Origin: Blepharisma stoltei ATCC 30299
Taxonomy: Eukaryota > Protista > Ciliophora
Reading direction: 5' to 3'
NCBI GenBank assembly: GCA_965603825.1
Contig: CBFDEM010000060.1
Span: forward strand, 496,001-560,000
Length of the DNA: 64,000 bases
Part shown: positions 47,965 to 56,066 of the stretch, in pieces
Layout: each line of letters opens with the position of its first letter
Position numbering within the stretch: the first letter of the stretch is position 1
The notes under the pieces: generated by a model
The model's database searches: none
Told to the model about the DNA's origin: nothing
Seen by the model: only the letters and a program-made list of their open reading frames with translations
Position numbers and translations under genes: made by a program

Positions 47965-48501
47965 TTACATATTTAATGCCATTTCAGTCAAAATATCTTC
48001 TTCTTCTCCAAGCTCGTCCATTTCATTCACAATATCTTCAAGCTCATCTTCGTCAATATCCATGTCCATGTCTGATTCTTCTTTTTCATCTTTTTCGCTT
48101 TTTTCATCTTTTTCTTCTTTTTCTTCCTTTTTGTCGACTTTCAAGCTATAATCATTGTCGTCTTTTGGCCTCGATTCTTCAGGTTTCACTTTGATTCTTG
48201 ACATATCTTCGCTGTTCAAGTTTTTGATTTTCTTTTGAATGATCATTTTGTTTAGCTCAATTAGTGTTTCTAGCTCAAGGGTCGCAATCAATTTAATAAG
48301 AAATCCTCTATCTGGAGGCTTGGCATCTGGAACATAAGGTTTTAGCTTACTACTGGTAAGACAGTGATTGTATAAATCAGCTGTTTTTGAGGGAACGTAA
48401 GAAACTTGAGGAAGGCAAAATTCTCTGGTGTCTTTTAAGGGGAGGGCTTTCTTTTCGCCTGACTCAATTTGCTTTAAAAATTGGAGAGGACAGTTTTTCA
48501 T
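47965..48501 (-). CDS. Hypothetical protein with globular N-terminal half and acidic tail (start uncertain)
   Basis: 178-aa ORF; the frame stays open 17 codons upstream (LPFYEYLAHRYQLLLPE) without an ATG. Confidence 0.7.
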   Translation of the reverse strand: MKNCPLQFLKQIESGEKKALPLKDTREFCLPQVSYVPSKTADLYNHCLTSSKLKPYVPDAKPPDRGFLIKLIATLELETLIELNKMIIQKKIKNLNSEDMSRIKVKPEESRPKDDNDYSLKVDKKEEKEEKDEKSEKDEKEESDMDMDIDEDELEDIVNEMDELGEEEDILTEMALNM

Positions 48502-48949: not shown

Positions 48950-49621
48950 ATGAAAAAAACCGGAAGACTCACCTCAGGCAAGCTAAATCTGAAAGAAATG
49001 ATAGACCTCCTTGACAGTGACGGCTTACTTACCGATCTTCAGCAGGTAATCTCAAAAATCCATACCAAAGTTTCGCCTCTAAAGGGAAACAAAAAAGAAG
49101 CATTCATGAACCTTCTGGATCTCCTTGTTACTAAAGAATGGAGGTCTACCACAGCAGCTTCAACCGAAGCTGACGAAGGAGTGGTCCAAACTCCCATTTT
49201 TTCAGCTAAACAGTCTCCAGTAAATTCGAGACCAGCAACGCCGTCAAATTCAGGCATGAGCTTATTAAACTTAAAGCATAAAAGAAATGCCTCAATCAGT
49301 GAACTTACAGAGACTTACGTCAATAAACATAAACTTTTTGAAGAAGGCCAAAAAGAAGAGCTTGATTACTTGGTGACTTTTATTTAGAGCGAATTTTCTC
49401 ATGCAAATATTGCAGTGTCTTTTCCAAAAGCAAAAAGGGACTTAGGGGAAGTTAAAGATGTAAACCCTGGGCCTGGGTCTTATAACCCAAAAACAATTCT
49501 TGTGGAAGAAACTACACCGTCATCAGTGATACCAAAAGGAGGGAAGCGTTTTGAATTCAAGGTCCCAGAAACTCCTGGCCCGTGCTATTACAAGCCGAAA
49601 CGCTATCTTATCTCAAAATAA
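48950..49621 (+). CDS. Protein with C-terminal SHIPPO/PGP repeats
   Basis: 15-nt intron 49373-49387 (GTGACTTTTATTTAG); NPGPGSY and TPGPCYY. Confidence 0.8.
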
Positions 49622-50285: not shown

Positions 50286-50525
50286 ATTTATTATAAGAAA
50301 GGGACAGAATAATAAAATTGCAATAAGTAATCTAATAAACTACTAACAGACAATATCAGATAAAACATGCTCCAAATCTATTAAAAAGAATTTTGATTGT
50401 ATTAATATTTGCCTCATAGATTTTTTAGGTAAGCCAGTAGCTGCTGGCACATTATTATTTAAATTATTCAAAAATTTTTAAATTTTTATTTTTCATCACA
50501 TTTTAAGCATTAATTATCAAGAATA

Positions 50526-52130
50526 TTACGAGGGACATTGTCTGTCTCTATCAGTAAGTGGCGCATAGTTAACAGTTTGTGAGCTGTGAGTTTGAAGATT
50601 ACCATTTTCGTCCTTCTTCACAATTGTAATGTGCTGAAACCCACTTATAGGTCCTACTGGAGCCATTAGCACCCCACCAGGAGCAAGCTGTTCTAGCAAT
50701 GGCTGCGGGATTTCTGGAGTAGCTGCTCCAATATGAATTACATCAAAAGGTGCATACTCCAACAACCCTATTCTTCCGTCTCTATGGACCATTCTCATTT
50801 CTAAGTCATTTTTCTGCAATAAGTACAAATTAGATTTTCTAATATTATCAATAGCTTGATTTATCAGTTCTTCAATATGGTCAACTCCATAGACTTTCCC
50901 TCTCCCAATCATCTTTGCCATACATACAGTTAGATATCCACTGCCACAGCCTATGTCAAGGACTCTTGCTCCAGGGACAAGCCATGGCTCAAGAATTGAT
51001 AAGGTCATTGCGTGCATATGAGGAGCCGAAATGGTTGTATTGAAGCCAATACGTTGAGGTCTGTCTTCATAAGGGCTGCTTTCGTCTGGGATAAAATCTT
51101 TGCGGTCTGTAGACTCCATTACAGTTCTGACACTTTGGGTTGAAATCAGTCCTTCAATAGCTAAGGTTTCGACCAGTTGGACTTGTAAAGGGTTGCTATG
51201 GACTTCTTCAGCAGCTGGAAGCACCTCAGGAGACCATTTAAGCTCATTTTCAATCGCTATTTCCTGAGAAGTAAGCCCTTCAACTGACCTCAATGCACTA
51301 TCAAGGCTGATATCCATATTAAAATTCAAATTTTCTGCTTCCTGCTCCAACGTTTTTAGCTTATCTGCTAGCTTATCCTGCTCAAACGACAGTTTATTTA
51401 TAGACTGCACCGCTTGCAGCCTCGCAGGCCCCGCAATTTTTGAAATTTGCCTCATAATCCCATCTATATCAGAAATCGTTTTTTGCCTTTTTTTGACAAT
51501 ATCGTCACAATACTCCACATTTTCTTGGATTCTTTTGACAAGTGCATTTACCGGCCTATTTAAGCTCATAACAAATTCCTTCTTCTTTTTATCAATAGCT
51601 TGTAAAAGTGGTTCAAATTTTCTATCAATTTCTTCTATTGCTTTAGCCTTCTTTTCTTCTACTTTATTAAAGATATTCACAGACCAATCTCGTTCTGATC
51701 TAGCAGTGCTGAGAAGGTCTTCAGCTTTTTTCTTTGCTTCTTCAAGCTGCTTATCGGTGCCTTGTGTTATAACAGTATCGTCTATATCGTAAAAATCATG
51801 CTTTTTGTGCTTTGTCGCACAGCGGGAACAAAACGGGACATTCTCGTCTAAACAGAAAAAAGTGGCTTCTAAGTTCTGGTGTTCAGCACAAGGAGCCAAA
51901 GGCTCGTTTTTGGACTCAGATAAGTGCTGCAAAACCAAAATATTTTTCTTCATTAAGGAAACTTCTCGATAATCTTTACTTCTGCAATGAGGGCAGTTCA
52001 GAGCGCCCATTCGTCTTTCCATTGCGGAAATGCATTTTAAGCAGAAGGTATGGCCACAGTGGAGAACTAGTGGGGAGCCTTCGCTGCTGTTGAAGTCGTG
52101 AAAGCAAATTGGGCATTGAAAAGATTCCAT
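50526..52130 (-). CDS. RING/B-box/coiled-coil (TRIM-like) protein fused to protein-L-isoaspartate O-methyltransferase
   Basis: RING CPIC..CGHTFCLKC..CPHC; B-box CAEH..FCLDE..CSRC..HKKH; coiled coil; PIMT PYEDRPQRIGFNTTISAPHMHA, VLDIGCGSGY, APFDVIHIGAA, EQLAPGG and YAPLTD. Confidence 0.93.
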   Translation of the reverse strand: MESFQCPICFHDFNSSEGSPLVLHCGHTFCLKCISAMERRMGALNCPHCRSKDYREVSLMKKNILVLQHLSESKNEPLAPCAEHQNLEATFFCLDENVPFCSRCATKHKKHDFYDIDDTVITQGTDKQLEEAKKKAEDLLSTARSERDWSVNIFNKVEEKKAKAIEEIDRKFEPLLQAIDKKKKEFVMSLNRPVNALVKRIQENVEYCDDIVKKRQKTISDIDGIMRQISKIAGPARLQAVQSINKLSFEQDKLADKLKTLEQEAENLNFNMDISLDSALRSVEGLTSQEIAIENELKWSPEVLPAAEEVHSNPLQVQLVETLAIEGLISTQSVRTVMESTDRKDFIPDESSPYEDRPQRIGFNTTISAPHMHAMTLSILEPWLVPGARVLDIGCGSGYLTVCMAKMIGRGKVYGVDHIEELINQAIDNIRKSNLYLLQKNDLEMRMVHRDGRIGLLEYAPFDVIHIGAATPEIPQPLLEQLAPGGVLMAPVGPISGFQHITIVKKDENGNLQTHSSQTVNYAPLTDRDRQCPS

Positions 52131-52291
52131 TGATATTTATTATCAGAATAGCGAATGAAATGCAAAAGCAAAATATATTCTTGCATAATAGCATAATACC
52201 GACCAGTATTGCAAGAATATATGATTCAATTAAAAATAGTTGGAAATTTAAACTAAAATAAATTATATTGAATTGTATAAGCAATTAATTA

Positions 52292-53119
52292 TTATAATTT
52301 TTCATAGTCTGGAGGAGTGGGAGGATTTGCATCATCTGGAGGACACTGAAAGATGTTCTCGCTTTCTCTTCTTGTAGAAACCCCTTCGAATTTTCTTTTG
52401 ACATTGTTTTTTATATTGTCAAGCATGCTTTTTGTGTTTTCCTTGAAGTTTTGGATCATTGGAGTATTGCTTCACTCTTTTGTTTTGGTTATCCCTTCTT
52501 TAACCCCGCTTTCTAGTTTAGACAGCGCGCTTACAGTTTTGACTTCTCATTCTTTTACAGTAGGTTTTTCTGTCATTTCTTTGACTTTATTAGTTACTTT
52601 ATCTCCCAAAGATCTTGCAGCTGAAATTGCAGAATCGAAAGTCCCTTTCCAAGAAAAGCCTCTTTCATTATTTTCTACACAAAAAGACTTAGCTTCTTCT
52701 TCATTCACCATTAATAAACCCTGCTCTAAGCTTGGCTGCTCTGCTTGGTAGATTCTTCCATCAGATATTTTTTTCAGCATCTCTCTATAATATTGAGCTG
52801 CTCTAGTTCTATATTTTACAGATATTTCCATATCCGCTGGCATATGATATATACTAAAAAACCTCGCCAGGGCTGAATTTCCTCCAACAGTCATCATTTT
52901 TAGCTGCTTTATGCTCCAATGGTCATTCACAATTTTTCTCACAAAGCTCAGATGTAGCCCAAGCTCAATATGTTTGATTGCACAATTTTCACAAATAAAA
53001 ATCCCATAGCTGACTGAAGCTCATTCTGGGTTTGGCTTTCAGCAGTCAAAGCAAACATTATTGCTCTGGTCTTCTTTGAGTTTTTTAAATCTTTCTTCTG
53101 CGGATTCTTTTGTTACCAT
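52292..53119 (-). CDS. ArfGAP1/Gcs1-type zinc-finger protein with catalytic Arg replaced (275 aa)
   Basis: NNVCFDC(W)KPNPE(W)ASVSYGIFICENCAIKHIELGLHLSFVRK..W..MTVGGN..KYRTRAAQYYR; 4 TGA. Confidence 0.9.
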
Positions 53120-53141: not shown

Positions 53142-56066
53142 TTAAATTATTTCGAATTTGTAAAGAGAGTCTATGTCAGATTCGACGCTGGGGTAGGCTT
53201 GTGAGAGCTCAGCTTTTTGATGGGGTGTTAGCCTGTGAAAATTCATTAGGATGTCAATATCGATTATCTGTGTAGAGTTGCGAGGGGTTTGAAGATGGAG
53301 AAGCCTCTGAATTGAGGATTGAAGAGATAATAGTTCTTTTTTTAATGGGTATGTAATCTGGTATACTGCGCCAGTCCAAGAAAAGAAGAGGGCGTTTTGG
53401 TTGCATGATGGCTTTAAAGATGTATTTGTCAGGTTTCCAGAGATTATTGCTCTTCCTCCATCATGGAGATCATCGAGTGTTATTATTTTCTTTGAGTCTT
53501 TTTCGAGAATTTTGATACTTCCTAGTTTGTCGATCATTATGATAAATTGGTCCATAATTAAAATATTGGAAATAAGGAATCCTCTTAGTGATGCATGTTC
53601 AAAAGTCAATGTATCAGTCAAAGTGTACTGTAAAATACCATCTCTGCTGTCTATTGAATAAAGAATGTTTTGTTCTGAATAGAGACCAATAACAGAATTC
53701 CTGACTCTTGTAGTTGCAATACTTTCAATATTGATGCCCTCTCCAAGTCTTAATACAAAAATATGTTCTTCAGCTCCCACTATCATTTTATCTTCATGTA
53801 TACAAATTGCCTGCACTCCATGAGGGAAAAATCCTCTATAAAGCTCCGTAAACCCTTCTTGAGAAATAATTGTAACAATTCCTTTCCTTTCTAATGTTTC
53901 TCCTCCTATTGCAATTCCATCATACTGCGGAATATTCGCCATACAGTACATTTTTTCTGAATTTGTATAGCTCAAACTTGGGAAATTTCCACTGAAATTA
54001 TAGTCAGACAAAGCTATATGGTCTGCAATATCTCTATATATATAAGCTATTTTATTCCTATTTGGCAGATATAACAGTCGTTTTATTGAGCCTTTTATGC
54101 TTATAAGCTCTTTTGTATTTAAAGAGTATGGCGTTGGGTTTTCTAGTGCAGCTATCAATATATCTTTATTAATACATATAAAATAGGAATTATCTAATGA
54201 GCAGCCACTTCGCATATCAATTTCAATTGGCCTGAATTCTAAATTTTCATTATAAATTAGTATTGCACGATCAGAAATCGCAATCAGCCCAATTTTATAT
54301 TTAAAAAGTGTCACAGGCTTATTGCCAAGTTTTTTATATATTGGAGGATCCAAGCACACAATGAGATTCCCGTCTCTGCAGCCAATAAACATTTGGTTCC
54401 ACATAAATCTAAATAAATTTTACATGACTGAATGTGGAATTGAGGATTCTTGTAGAGCATACACAAATTTGTTAATTACATTTCCAGTCATATCCAGCTG
54501 TAAAGTTTCGCAGGATTGTAAGCCTATATAGATTGATTCATTATAAATATTTATCATAGAAACATCATAATTTGGGAGTTTTCATAGAACTTCTAAGGCT
54601 GGATTGAGCATCACTAATTCTTGACTAGAAAAAGACACACATATAGAAGAATCTGAGATGCAGGCACCAATTATAGTGGAATTAAAATCTTTTTGAGATG
54701 AGCCATTTTTGATGTAGGTTGAGGTTATGTGTATCCAGTCTCTATTGGACTTCCCAATATCTATGTAATTTTCATCTACTAAGCCTAGAGCAGAGGACTG
54801 GATTGGCTTCATTGTATTGTAGTCAAGAGCCTTAACTCCTTTTGTGTAAAACAAAAATATGATATTTTCAACTGTCTTAGCCCAAAGACATGATTGGCCG
54901 ATATCAGGGATTTGGATAACAACGCTGAAGGTTAAGCCTTAATAAAAATTACTGTTTGAGAGTTCTAGCAGTGAAGAGCTTTGCCCAATTCCACATGCAA
55001 TAATTATAGATTCAGAATTAATTTCATTTTCCTTTTCATGCTTTTTTATTGTAATTGCGTCAAGGATAGCTCCATGTACAGATGAAGGGATTTTTAAATC
55101 GCCATTGGTATTCAGGTTAAAGCCTCTGATTTCTCCTTGTTTTCCAAATATATAGCAAAACCCTTTTAGTGTGGTAATAATTGAATCTTGAGGGATTTCT
55201 TTTATTATATTTGACCTTTTCCTTGACAGCAAATATATCTGTCCAATGTCATTATTGATATATAATTCATTATTATGTATGATATGAGAACAATAAATCC
55301 CAGAAAATTCAATTTCATCAAAATCGTCTTGGTCTATGTTTTTTTGGTTATATTTCAAAGCGTGGATTATATTTTCATAGAAAATATAAATTTTTTTATC
55401 AAAACATATAAAAGCTGTTGGAAATGCATCACCATTTTCAAGGATAGGAGAAAAATGTATAAACGTGCTTAAAGAGAGCAATGATTTATTCACTTTATAT
55501 TCTTTCCAGAAATATAATGGATACTCTCCTGTAGGATTTCTACATAAAATCAGCATAGTTTTTTCGTCGACGAAATTGAAATCTACAATAAAAGACTCAA
55601 CATCAATTTCATACAAAAAGGTAAGCTTCTTTTCTATATCATTCCATTTTAGCACCCACATATAATCCTGTACCAAAGAGGCCGCTATCATGCCATCAAT
55701 ACTTGCTTTTATCCCTACACAAAATTGTTGACTTTCATTTTCATTGCTAATCCTTAATTCATAGCTGTATATTACTTCAAAATACCCCGTCCCCTCAGAA
55801 AACTCATATATTTTAAGTGCAGTTTTTGTCGCAACACACACCAGATCTTTGTCACGAGTCGAAATTTTGCATGAGCTGAAAATATTTTCATTAAAAAGCT
55901 GCTCGTGTATCGGGATAAGCTTTTCTGGCTTTTCTTCATTGATGGTGAAGACTTGCAAAGATTTTTCTTTAATTCCAATAATCACTTCAACTGATTGTAG
56001 GAATTTGCCTGGGTAAACAGATAGAAATTCACTTTGCGATTGAAGGACTTTTATGCCAAAATCCAT
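53142..56066 (-). CDS. Divergent DDB1/SF3B3/CPSF1-family beta-propeller protein (964 aa)
   Basis: 15-nt introns 54938-54952 and 54409-54423, TGA 54582-54584; IIIACGIGQSSSL and C-terminal IIDIDILMNFHRL resemble CPSF_A/DDB1 motifs. Confidence 0.68.

What the first reader, a model, noticed from the sequence alone, without database searches (positions are those of the whole stretch)
50526..52130. TRIM-type E3 ligase fused to an intact isoaspartyl repair methyltransferase: a possible repair-or-destroy enzyme
Seen: one 534-aa ORF with no internal stop or TGA and no intron needed. It carries a C3HC4 RING (aa ~6-49), a B-box (~80-113), a long coiled coil (~120-295) and a full PIMT/PCMT1 domain (~310-534). 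PIMT motifs for isoAsp binding (TISAPHMH) and SAM binding (LDIGCGSGY, PFDVIHIGAA, YAPLTD) look intact. Established: in TRIM proteins the domain after RING/B-box/coil is usually the substrate receptor; PIMT recognises L-isoAsp damage; animal PCMTD1 links a PIMT-like domain to a Cullin-5 ligase through a SOCS box. Inference: this may be an independently evolved single-chain ligase that binds isoAsp-damaged proteins and either repairs them or ubiquitylates them. I know of no described RING-B-box-PIMT architecture.
Basis: partly seen in the sequence, partly recalled or inferred. Interest (0 to 1): 0.9.

Follow-up and report, generated by a model that had tools for sequence, protein, structure and literature searches.

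The report
Ubiquitin ligase fused to protein-repair enzyme
A ciliate gene, seen as one continuous message and conserved in related ciliates, joins a TRIM-type ubiquitin-ligase module to an apparently active enzyme that recognises age-damaged (isoaspartyl) proteins, which suggests a single protein that repairs such proteins or marks them for destruction; no activity has been tested.

Summary
Window 50526-52130 (- strand) is one 534-aa ORF with no in-frame TGA and no intron. It encodes a C3HC4 RING, a B-box2, a helix of about 110 residues with fold-back helices, and a full PCMT1-like isoaspartyl methyltransferase domain.

Assembled contigs from four public runs cover only 50483-52171. One 1635-nt contig spans the whole ORF without a joint. 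The genome matches Blepharisma stoltei (41 Mb, 64 contigs, UGA = Trp).

The protein is not unique. A 529-aa paralog lies on contig 55, and full-length relatives occur in Fabrea, Stentor, B. japonicum and about 50 unnamed clusters. All zinc ligands and PCMT motifs are invariant across them. This includes the Thr that human PCMTD1 has replaced by His.

The genome also keeps a stand-alone PIMT. It holds at least 60 other RING/B-box genes, some with PHR or Kelch C-termini.

Best reading: a TRIM-like E3 whose receptor domain is a still-catalytic PIMT, analogous to CRL5-PCMTD1 but in one chain. The anatomy is shown; the function is inferred. Databases already hold these proteins under automatic PIMT names, but I found no paper that describes them. 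The scan also flagged the paralog separately (s1-629548).

Verdict: new variant of a known kind.

The parts
50483..52171 (-). Extent of the assembled contigs, taken as the transcript (about 41 nt before the ATG and about 43 nt after the stop)
   Evidence: contigs of runs X1-X4 lie only within 50483-52171, with zero depth in the flanks. X4 record 15 is a single 1635-nt contig at 50489-52123. No joints were reported.
50526..52130 (-). Complete 534-aa coding sequence including the TAA stop
   Evidence: Full-length relatives cover 100% of it.
51981..52118 (-). C3HC4 RING finger (aa 5-50). Ligands are C6 C9 C25 H27 C30 C33 C46 C49. I8 and P47 sit at usual E2-contact positions, and R50 sits at the linchpin position after the last Cys.
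   Evidence: Pfam. C6-C46 are invariant in 18 relatives. Foldseek to TRIM23/32/2 RINGs gives TMt 0.75-0.86 and rmsd 1.1-2.4 A. The roles assigned to I8, P47 and R50 come from general knowledge of RING domains.
51792..51896 (-). B-box type 2 zinc finger (aa 79-113). Ligands are C81 H84 C93 D96 C101 C104 H108 H111.
   Evidence: Pfam PF00643 at 3e-7. Seven of the ligands are invariant in A1 and in A3 of 59 rows.
51444..51776 (-). Long helix (aa 119-229), the TRIM-like coiled-coil H1
   Evidence: AF2 models with pLDDT 85-96 over this stretch. The KAP1/TRIM28 tripartite motif aligns over 303 columns, and TRIM72 and TRIM5alpha B-box-coiled-coil structures also match.
51279..51428 (-). Three short helices (aa 235-245, 255-266, 277-284), placed like the L2 fold-back region of TRIM proteins
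   Evidence: The analogy to the TRIM L2 region is inference.
51192..51278 (-). Non-helical linker (aa 285-313) between the RBCC module and the methyltransferase
   Evidence: lower pLDDT of 69-84. The region is variable in A1.
50529..51191 (-). PCMT1-like L-isoaspartyl methyltransferase domain (aa 314-534). It carries pre-motif I TTISAPHMH, motif I LDIGCGSG, post-I VDHI, motif II/III, and YAPLTD.
   Evidence: Pfam 1.1e-65. 1i1n at 4.9e-55. Foldseek to 1i1n/1kr5 gives TMt 0.93-0.94 and rmsd 1.4-2.0 A. Motif residues are invariant in A1.

Best explanation
The gene encodes a single-chain TRIM-like (RING, B-box2, coiled-coil) ubiquitin ligase. In place of the usual C-terminal substrate-receptor domain it carries a PCMT1-type L-isoaspartyl methyltransferase that still looks catalytically competent.

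Proposed mechanism (inferred):
1. The PCMT domain, loaded with AdoMet, binds L-isoaspartyl sites on spontaneously damaged proteins.
2. It can methylate them, which is the first step of repair.
3. While the substrate is held, the RING recruits an E2~ubiquitin and ubiquitylates it.
4. Substrates that are bound for long, bound repeatedly, or damaged at several sites are therefore sent for degradation.

The coiled coil probably makes an antiparallel dimer that presents two PCMT domains, as in other TRIM proteins.

Shown here: the architecture, its continuity in assembled contigs, conservation of every catalytic and zinc-binding motif, and a separate stand-alone PIMT in the same genome.

Inferred: E3 activity, methyltransferase activity, dimerisation, and the coupling between them.
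For: (1) One ORF, and assembled contigs cross the domain junction. X4 has a 1635-nt contig at 50489-52123 and X1 has a 1210-nt contig at 50962-52171. There are no joints and no coverage of the flanks. Separate transcriptome assemblies of B. japonicum (P0123, 97% identical) and Fabrea salina (P0124) also run from the B-box to the PCMT domain.

(2) The architecture is conserved. Full-length relatives at 45-59% identity occur in Fabrea, Stentor coeruleus and unnamed samples. There is a paralog at 47% on contig 55, and a second clade at 25-32% identity.

(3) Across 18 of these, the RING ligands C6-C46, seven B-box ligands, and PCMT residues T365 T366 S368 A369 P370 H371 H373 D392 G394 G396 G398 D417 H418 are invariant.

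(4) In PCMTD1, a Thr-to-His change blocks the AdoMet-to-substrate channel and Thr-to-His inactivates PCMT1 (PMC12590147). Every fusion keeps Thr.

(5) The PCMT fold is PCMT1-like (TMt 0.93-0.94), whereas PCMTD1 9oma gives TMt 0.65.

(6) The best structural matches of the N-terminal model are nearly all TRIM proteins.

(7) The genome holds at least 62 B-box matches and at least 69 matches to the RBCC module. Members carry PHR, Kelch or no recognisable C-terminal domain. The PCMT domain sits in this family's variable C-terminal slot.

(8) A canonical 236-aa PIMT is retained on contig 33, so the fusions are additional to basic repair.

(9) Five variant positions in the expressed contigs are all synonymous.

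(10) CRL5-PCMTD1 shows that isoAsp can act as an E3 recognition site (PMC12590147).
Against: - No biochemical data exist for any member.
- Only 5 residues precede the first RING cysteine. The N-terminal helix that helps TRIM25/32/5alpha RINGs dimerise is therefore absent, and some monomeric TRIM RINGs are inactive in vitro (PMC6487577, seen by abstract only).
- Strict retention of catalytic residues fits equally well with a protein whose main job is methylation.
- The runs used for transcript evidence are labelled RNA only as a guess. They are contigs, not reads, so strand and exact ends are not shown.
- The two P0031/P0032 relatives lack the last RING cysteine.
- The PCMT tree cannot show that RING-PCMT fusions arose more than once (p-AU 0.39), so there is no convergence argument within this set.
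Confidence: 0.55

Rival explanations
1. It is mainly a repair methyltransferase. The RBCC module serves to dimerise, localise or regulate the enzyme, for example by auto-ubiquitylation that sets its own level or by anchoring it to a cell structure. It does not ubiquitylate the damaged substrates.
For: All PCMT catalytic motifs, including the channel Thr, are invariant, and the domain is PCMT1-like. The N-terminus before the RING is short. Several RBCC paralogs in this genome have no recognisable C-terminal receptor domain (L012, L017), so the module may have roles of its own.
Against: The RING zinc ligands and the R/K at the linchpin position are kept over deep divergence. That is hard to explain if E2 recruitment were dispensable. 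A stand-alone PIMT already covers plain repair. In TRIM proteins the C-terminal domain is normally the substrate receptor (general knowledge).
Confidence: 0.27
2. The PCMT domain has been re-purposed. It recognises or methylates one specific partner or a non-damage carboxyl group, and the ligase controls a particular pathway rather than general protein-damage triage.
For: Motif I reads GCGSG in the fusion clades, against GSGSG in canonical enzymes and in this genome's own stand-alone PIMT. The fusion clades are separate, well-supported branches with long stems. There are two diverged paralogs in one genome (47% identity).
Against: [quoted passage not shown] The predicted fold superposes on human PCMT1 at 1.4-2.0 A with no insertions.
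Confidence: 0.13
3. It is an artefact: two adjacent genes merged by assembly, or a chance read-through ORF.
For: None found. The only caveat is that the transcript evidence rests on contigs from runs whose RNA label is a guess.
Against: The same 524-544-aa architecture recurs in independent assemblies and transcriptomes of at least four named heterotrich ciliates and in many unnamed samples. A second copy sits on another contig. Contigs bridge the junction.
Confidence: 0.02

Closest known systems
PCMT1 / PIMT (protein-L-isoaspartate O-methyltransferase, EC 2.1.1.77; human 1i1n, 1kr5)
   Same: The C-terminal 220 aa match at 43-45% identity, E 4.9e-55 and TMt 0.93-0.94. All AdoMet and isoAsp motifs are present, including the channel Thr.
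   Different: PCMT1 is a free enzyme of about 226 aa. Here the domain is the C-terminus of a 534-aa RING/B-box/coiled-coil protein. Motif I has Cys at the position where PCMT1 has Ser.
PCMTD1 in the CRL5 ligase (PCMTD1-ELOB/C-CUL5-RBX2; PDB 9oma; PMC12590147)
   Same: A PCMT-type domain is linked to ubiquitin-ligase machinery. In PCMTD1, isoAsp serves as the recognition site and AdoMet is needed for engagement.
   Different: PCMTD1 recruits a separate cullin-RING through a SOCS box and is catalytically dead (Thr to His). The ciliate protein carries its own RING in the same chain, has no sequence after the PCMT domain that could hold a SOCS box, keeps Thr, and is structurally closer to PCMT1 (TMt 0.93 against 0.65).
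Metazoan TRIM / RBCC E3 ligases (for example TRIM28/KAP1 6qaj, TRIM21 5olm, TRIM32 5fey, TRIM72, TRIM5alpha)
   Same: The order and spacing of RING, B-box2 and long helix are the same. Sequence hits run to TRIM3 over aa 6-205, and nearly all the best fold hits are TRIMs.
   Different: It comes from a ciliate. It has a single B-box and a very short N-terminus before the RING. A methyltransferase as the C-terminal domain was not among the C-terminal domain classes mentioned in the passages I read of the two TRIM surveys (PMC2533329, PMC3503706). Orthology to any animal TRIM subfamily was not tested.
Other RBCC genes of the same genome (C-terminal PHR: L014, L018; Kelch: L015; none: L012, L017)
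   Same: They share an N-terminal RBCC module with 24-31% identity over about 200-250 aa.
   Different: Only two members (contig 60 and contig 55) carry PCMT. In the 1.84-billion-protein library, their RBCC module has just four representatives below E 1e-30. Three are full-length PCMT fusions and the fourth is a 289-aa fragment.

Membership tests
PIMT / PCMT (Pfam PF01135, EC 2.1.1.77) | Seven-beta-strand methyltransferase fold of the PCMT type, covering the whole domain | tested here: met
   Pfam 1.1e-65 over profile positions 5-209 of 210. Foldseek to 1i1n/1kr5 gives TMt 0.93-0.94.
PIMT / PCMT (Pfam PF01135, EC 2.1.1.77) | Pre-motif I T-I-S-A-P-H with Thr and Ser, motif I GxGxG, post-I D-H, motifs II and III, post-III PLT | tested here: met
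   The protein has TTISAPHMH, LDIGCGSG, VDHI, DGRIG, IHIGAA and YAPLTD. The residues are invariant in 18 relatives.
PIMT / PCMT (Pfam PF01135, EC 2.1.1.77) | AdoMet-dependent methyl esterification of L-isoAsp peptides | not testable with these tools
   This needs an enzyme assay.
TRIM / RBCC E3 ligases | N-terminal C3HC4 RING with all eight zinc ligands | tested here: met
   RING fold matches to TRIM23/32/2.
TRIM / RBCC E3 ligases | B-box (type 2) directly after the RING | tested here: met
   PF00643 at 3e-7 over aa 79-113. The C-H-C-D-C-C-H-H pattern is present.
TRIM / RBCC E3 ligases | Long coiled coil following the B-box, with helices that fold back on it | tested here: met
   This is a prediction only. 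AF2 gives a helix at 119-229 plus three short helices, pLDDT above 85. The alignment to the KAP1 tripartite motif spans 303 columns.
TRIM / RBCC E3 ligases | Antiparallel coiled-coil dimer and E2-dependent ubiquitin transfer | not testable with these tools
   Only monomer prediction is available, and no assay can be run here.
TRIM / RBCC E3 ligases | Common descent with an animal TRIM subfamily | not tested
   No RBCC phylogeny with animal TRIMs was built. The literature reports only TRIM37-like members outside animals (PMC3503706).
PCMTD1/2 (SOCS-box PCMT-domain proteins) | C-terminal SOCS box (BC box and Cul5 box) after the PCMT-like domain | tested here: not met
   The protein ends 5 residues after the PCMT domain (Pfam envelope to aa 529 of 534).
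PCMTD1/2 (SOCS-box PCMT-domain proteins) | His in place of the channel Thr (inactive methyltransferase) | tested here: not met
   Thr is kept in all fusions. The criterion comes from PMC12590147.

The most novel reading that the evidence does not exclude
The protein is a truly bifunctional triage enzyme. One active site methylates isoAsp (repair) while the RING of the same chain ubiquitylates whatever stays bound or rebinds. Dwell time, or the number of damaged sites, then decides between repair and destruction. That would be a self-contained kinetic-proofreading device for protein ageing. It would also be evolutionary evidence, alongside CRL5-PCMTD1, that isoAsp acts as a degron.
Probability: 0.3. 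Interest if true: 0.85.

Novelty: new variant of a known kind. Interest (0 to 1): 0.62.

Why it matters
IsoAsp formation is a major spontaneous form of protein ageing. Until the CRL5-PCMTD1 work (J Biol Chem 2025, PMC12590147), the only known response was methyl-dependent repair.

A conserved fusion of an intact PIMT to a RING ligase is a 'Rosetta stone' link between isoAsp recognition and ubiquitylation. It is found in a lineage far from animals, and here the methyltransferase still looks active.

It gives a compact, single-polypeptide system in which to test two questions: whether isoAsp acts as a degron, and how repair and degradation are partitioned.

It also adds to the evidence that full RING/B-box/coiled-coil proteins with varied receptor domains exist in large numbers outside animals. 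An early survey stated the opposite (PMC2533329).

Tried and rejected
(1) Independent origins of RING-PCMT fusions. In the PCMT tree, a RING-without-B-box clade (P0075/78/80/96/104) and P0074/P0114 fall in the other half from the RBCC fusions. However, an AU test does not reject one clade of all RING-bearing fusions (p-AU 0.39). I make no convergence claim.

(2) Taxonomic breadth. A second homology search with the distant member P0047 found about 20 more fusions, none with an organism name. Contig look-ups gave only metagenome records. The range beyond heterotrich ciliates stays unknown.

(3) Literature. Searches combining isoaspartyl/PIMT terms with RING, B-box, E3 or ciliate names found no description of this architecture. 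The library is incomplete, so absence there is not proof.

(4) Neighbouring ORFs in the window (47968-48501, 48950-49384, 52550-52942, 53145-54404, 54942-56066) have no Pfam match. They give no context.

(5) Artefact or two-gene reading: rejected.

(6) PCMTD membership: rejected (no SOCS box; Thr, not His).

(7) Notes on method. Own-genome paralogs with in-frame TGA were given to the tools in pieces by reference. Whole translations with TGA = Trp were made only inside scripts. No spliced model was needed.

Full report
**The sequence**

Window 50526-52130 on the - strand is a 534-aa ORF running from ATG to TAA. It has no in-frame TGA.

Pfam places the following domains:
- RING-finger families at aa 5-50
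- a B-box at aa 79-113
- a complete PCMT domain at aa 318-529 (E 1.1e-65, profile positions 5-209 of 210)

Against solved structures, the C-terminus matches human PCMT1 (1i1n) at E 4.9e-55. The N-terminus matches TRIM3 over aa 6-205, plus TRIM32, TRIM21 and TRIM72.

**The organism**

The assembly has 41.46 Mb in 64 contigs, and the window is contig 60:496001-560000. Paralogs carry in-frame TGA at positions that align with Trp or are read through. The protein is 97% identical to a Blepharisma japonicum transcriptome product.

This fits the published Blepharisma stoltei ATCC 30299 macronuclear genome. That genome has 41 Mbp, 64 telomere-to-telomere contigs, UGA = Trp, 15-16 bp introns and short UTRs (PMC9942806).

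**One message or two**

Four public runs of one 2022 study hold the stretch. Their contigs lie only on 50483-52171, with no depth on either flank.
- X4 has one 1635-nt contig covering 50489-52123, which is essentially the whole ORF.
- X1-X3 have a 1167-1210-nt contig running from inside the PCMT domain to beyond the ATG.
- No joints were found, so no intron is indicated.

The tool labels these runs 'RNA?' as a guess. Coverage that stops about 40 nt outside the ORF, in a genome without gene-sized chromosomes, is what RNA would give and DNA would not.

The contigs of X1-X3 break at a bubble of five variant positions (50898-50961). All five are third-codon-position synonymous changes. The published RNA-seq series mixed two mating-type strains, which could account for two variants. 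Independent transcriptome assemblies of B. japonicum (P0123) and Fabrea salina (P0124) also run from the B-box into the PCMT domain.

**Conservation**

A search of 5.8 billion proteins found full-length relatives with the same Pfam set:
- Fabrea salina (P0002 cluster, 59% identity)
- Stentor coeruleus SteCoe_23244 (P0006, 47%)
- a B. stoltei protein (P0010, 47%)
- many unnamed environmental proteins at 44-53%
- a more distant group at 25-32% identity over 99% of the length

A second search seeded with the distant member P0047 added about a dozen more, all unnamed. Together this is roughly 50 clusters at 90% identity.

An alignment of 18 full-length members (A1) shows these invariant residues:
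- RING ligands C6 C9 C25 H27 C30 C33 C46
- B-box ligands C81 H84 C93 C101 C104 H108 H111
- PCMT residues T365 T366 S368 A369 P370 H371 H373 D392 G394 G396 G398 D417 H418 I419 G452 G455 H466 G468

The linker and coiled-coil sequence varies freely. P0031 and P0032 lack the last RING cysteine.

**The rest of this genome**

PF01135 hits four real loci:
- this gene
- a 529-aa paralog with the same architecture on contig 55 (L003:568-2154, two in-frame TGA, identical to P0010)
- a canonical stand-alone PIMT of 236 aa on contig 33 (PCMT E 6.4e-71)
- a divergent 287-aa PCMT-like protein on contig 44

The RBCC module (aa 1-310) matches at least 69 places in the genome, and the B-box profile matches at least 62. 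Sampled members end in PHR domains (L014, L018), Kelch repeats (L015) or nothing recognisable (L012, L013, L017). The PCMT domain thus occupies the variable C-terminal slot of a large TRIM-like family.

Against 1.84 billion representatives, the RBCC part has only four hits below 1e-30. Three are full-length PCMT fusions and one is a 289-aa fragment. A further 100 hits lie between 1e-30 and 1e-10.

**Structure**

AlphaFold2 on a 77-row alignment gives mean pLDDT 92. The model shows:
- RING and B-box zinc folds
- one helix at aa 119-229
- helices at 235-245, 255-266 and 277-284
- a linker at about 285-313
- a methyltransferase domain

The PCMT domain superposes on human PCMT1 at TMt 0.93-0.94 and rmsd 1.4-2.0 A. 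PCMTD1 (9oma) ranks 17th with TMt 0.65.

A separate model of aa 1-310 (pLDDT 93) finds almost only TRIM proteins:
- the KAP1/TRIM28 tripartite motif (303 columns, prob 1.00)
- TRIM21 RING-B-box
- TRIM23, TRIM32 and TRIM2 RINGs (TMt 0.75-0.86)
- TRIM72 and TRIM5alpha

Global TM-scores for the elongated module are low, as expected for a long hinged rod.

**Phylogeny of the PCMT domain**

The tree has 98 rows.
- The window protein sits with the contig-55 paralog, Fabrea, Stentor and unnamed relatives in a fully supported clade of 22.
- The distant RBCC fusions form two further supported clades.
- All of these, together with this genome's stand-alone PIMT, lie on one side of a 95% branch.
- RING-only (no B-box) PCMT fusions of unknown organisms lie on the other side.

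An AU test does not reject a single clade of all RING-bearing fusions (p 0.39). I therefore make no claim of repeated independent fusion.

**Mechanism**

The relevant precedent is CRL5-PCMTD1 (PMC12590147).
- PCMTD1 binds isoAsp substrates only together with AdoMet and brings them to a cullin-RING ligase.
- It cannot methylate, partly because a Thr-to-His change blocks the AdoMet-to-substrate channel.
- Thr-to-His also inactivates PCMT1.

The ciliate fusions keep Thr everywhere and are PCMT1-like in fold, so methyl transfer is probably retained. The RING keeps all ligands. It also has a hydrophobic residue after the first Cys pair, a Pro before the last Cys, and Arg/Lys directly after the last Cys at the linchpin position. 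This last point is my reading of A1 against general knowledge of RING domains.

The most likely function is an isoAsp-directed E3 in one chain, which may both methylate and ubiquitylate. One caution applies. Only five residues precede the first cysteine, so the N-terminal helix used by several TRIM RINGs to dimerise is missing.

**Novelty**

The proteins are already in NCBI/UniRef under automatic PIMT names. Searches of the paper library found no description of a RING/B-box-PIMT protein.

An early survey called the tripartite motif exclusive to metazoans (PMC2533329). A later one found only TRIM37-like members elsewhere (PMC3503706).

The scan itself had noted the contig-55 paralog, and other TRIM-like families in this genome, as first-reader notes.

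Overall this is a new variant of a known kind (an isoAsp-recognising E3), with solid anatomy and untested function.

Noticed in passing
G000 contig 55:322913-324499 (L003:568-2154, + strand): A second RING/B-box/coiled-coil/PCMT gene of 529 aa, 47% identical to the window protein. It has two in-frame TGA (Trp) codons at aa 228 and 294 and is identical to database protein P0010 (B. stoltei).
   Followed up: yes
G000 contig 44 (L004:1234-2094, - strand): A divergent 287-aa PCMT-like protein (Pfam PCMT 3e-20). It has an altered pre-motif I, three in-frame TGA codons and an 88-aa C-terminal tail with no Pfam match. By sequence its best solved match is PCMT1, and PCMTD1 was not among the hits. Function unknown.
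   Followed up: partly
G000, at least 62 B-box and at least 69 RBCC matches genome-wide (for example L012-L019): A large family of TRIM-like RING/B-box/coiled-coil genes in a ciliate, with C-terminal PHR (L014, L018), Kelch (L015) or no known domain. This is at odds with the older statement that the tripartite motif is exclusive to metazoans.
   Followed up: partly
Database proteins P0018-P0021, P0023, P0027, P0037: Tandem PCMT-PCMT proteins with two complete domains in one chain. They occur in filarial and other nematodes, in Phytophthora, and in some proteins of unknown origin.
   Followed up: no
Database proteins P0077/P0092, P0046, P0041, P0117: Other PCMT fusions listed by their precomputed Pfam hits: a nucleotidyltransferase domain (MAST-4 stramenopile), a protein kinase, a UBX domain (Darwinula), and ankyrin plus SAM domains (Timema). 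Some may be gene-model merges. The UBX case would be another link to the ubiquitin system.
   Followed up: no
window 50868-50991: The expressed contigs of runs X1-X3 split into two variants that differ at five positions, all synonymous. The published RNA-seq series mixed two B. stoltei strains, which could account for this.
   Followed up: yes
window 47968-48501, 48950-49384, 52550-52942, 53145-54404, 54942-56066: The five neighbouring ORFs of 131-420 aa have no Pfam match at E <= 0.001. Run X2 has low-depth contigs over 52320-52616.
   Followed up: partly
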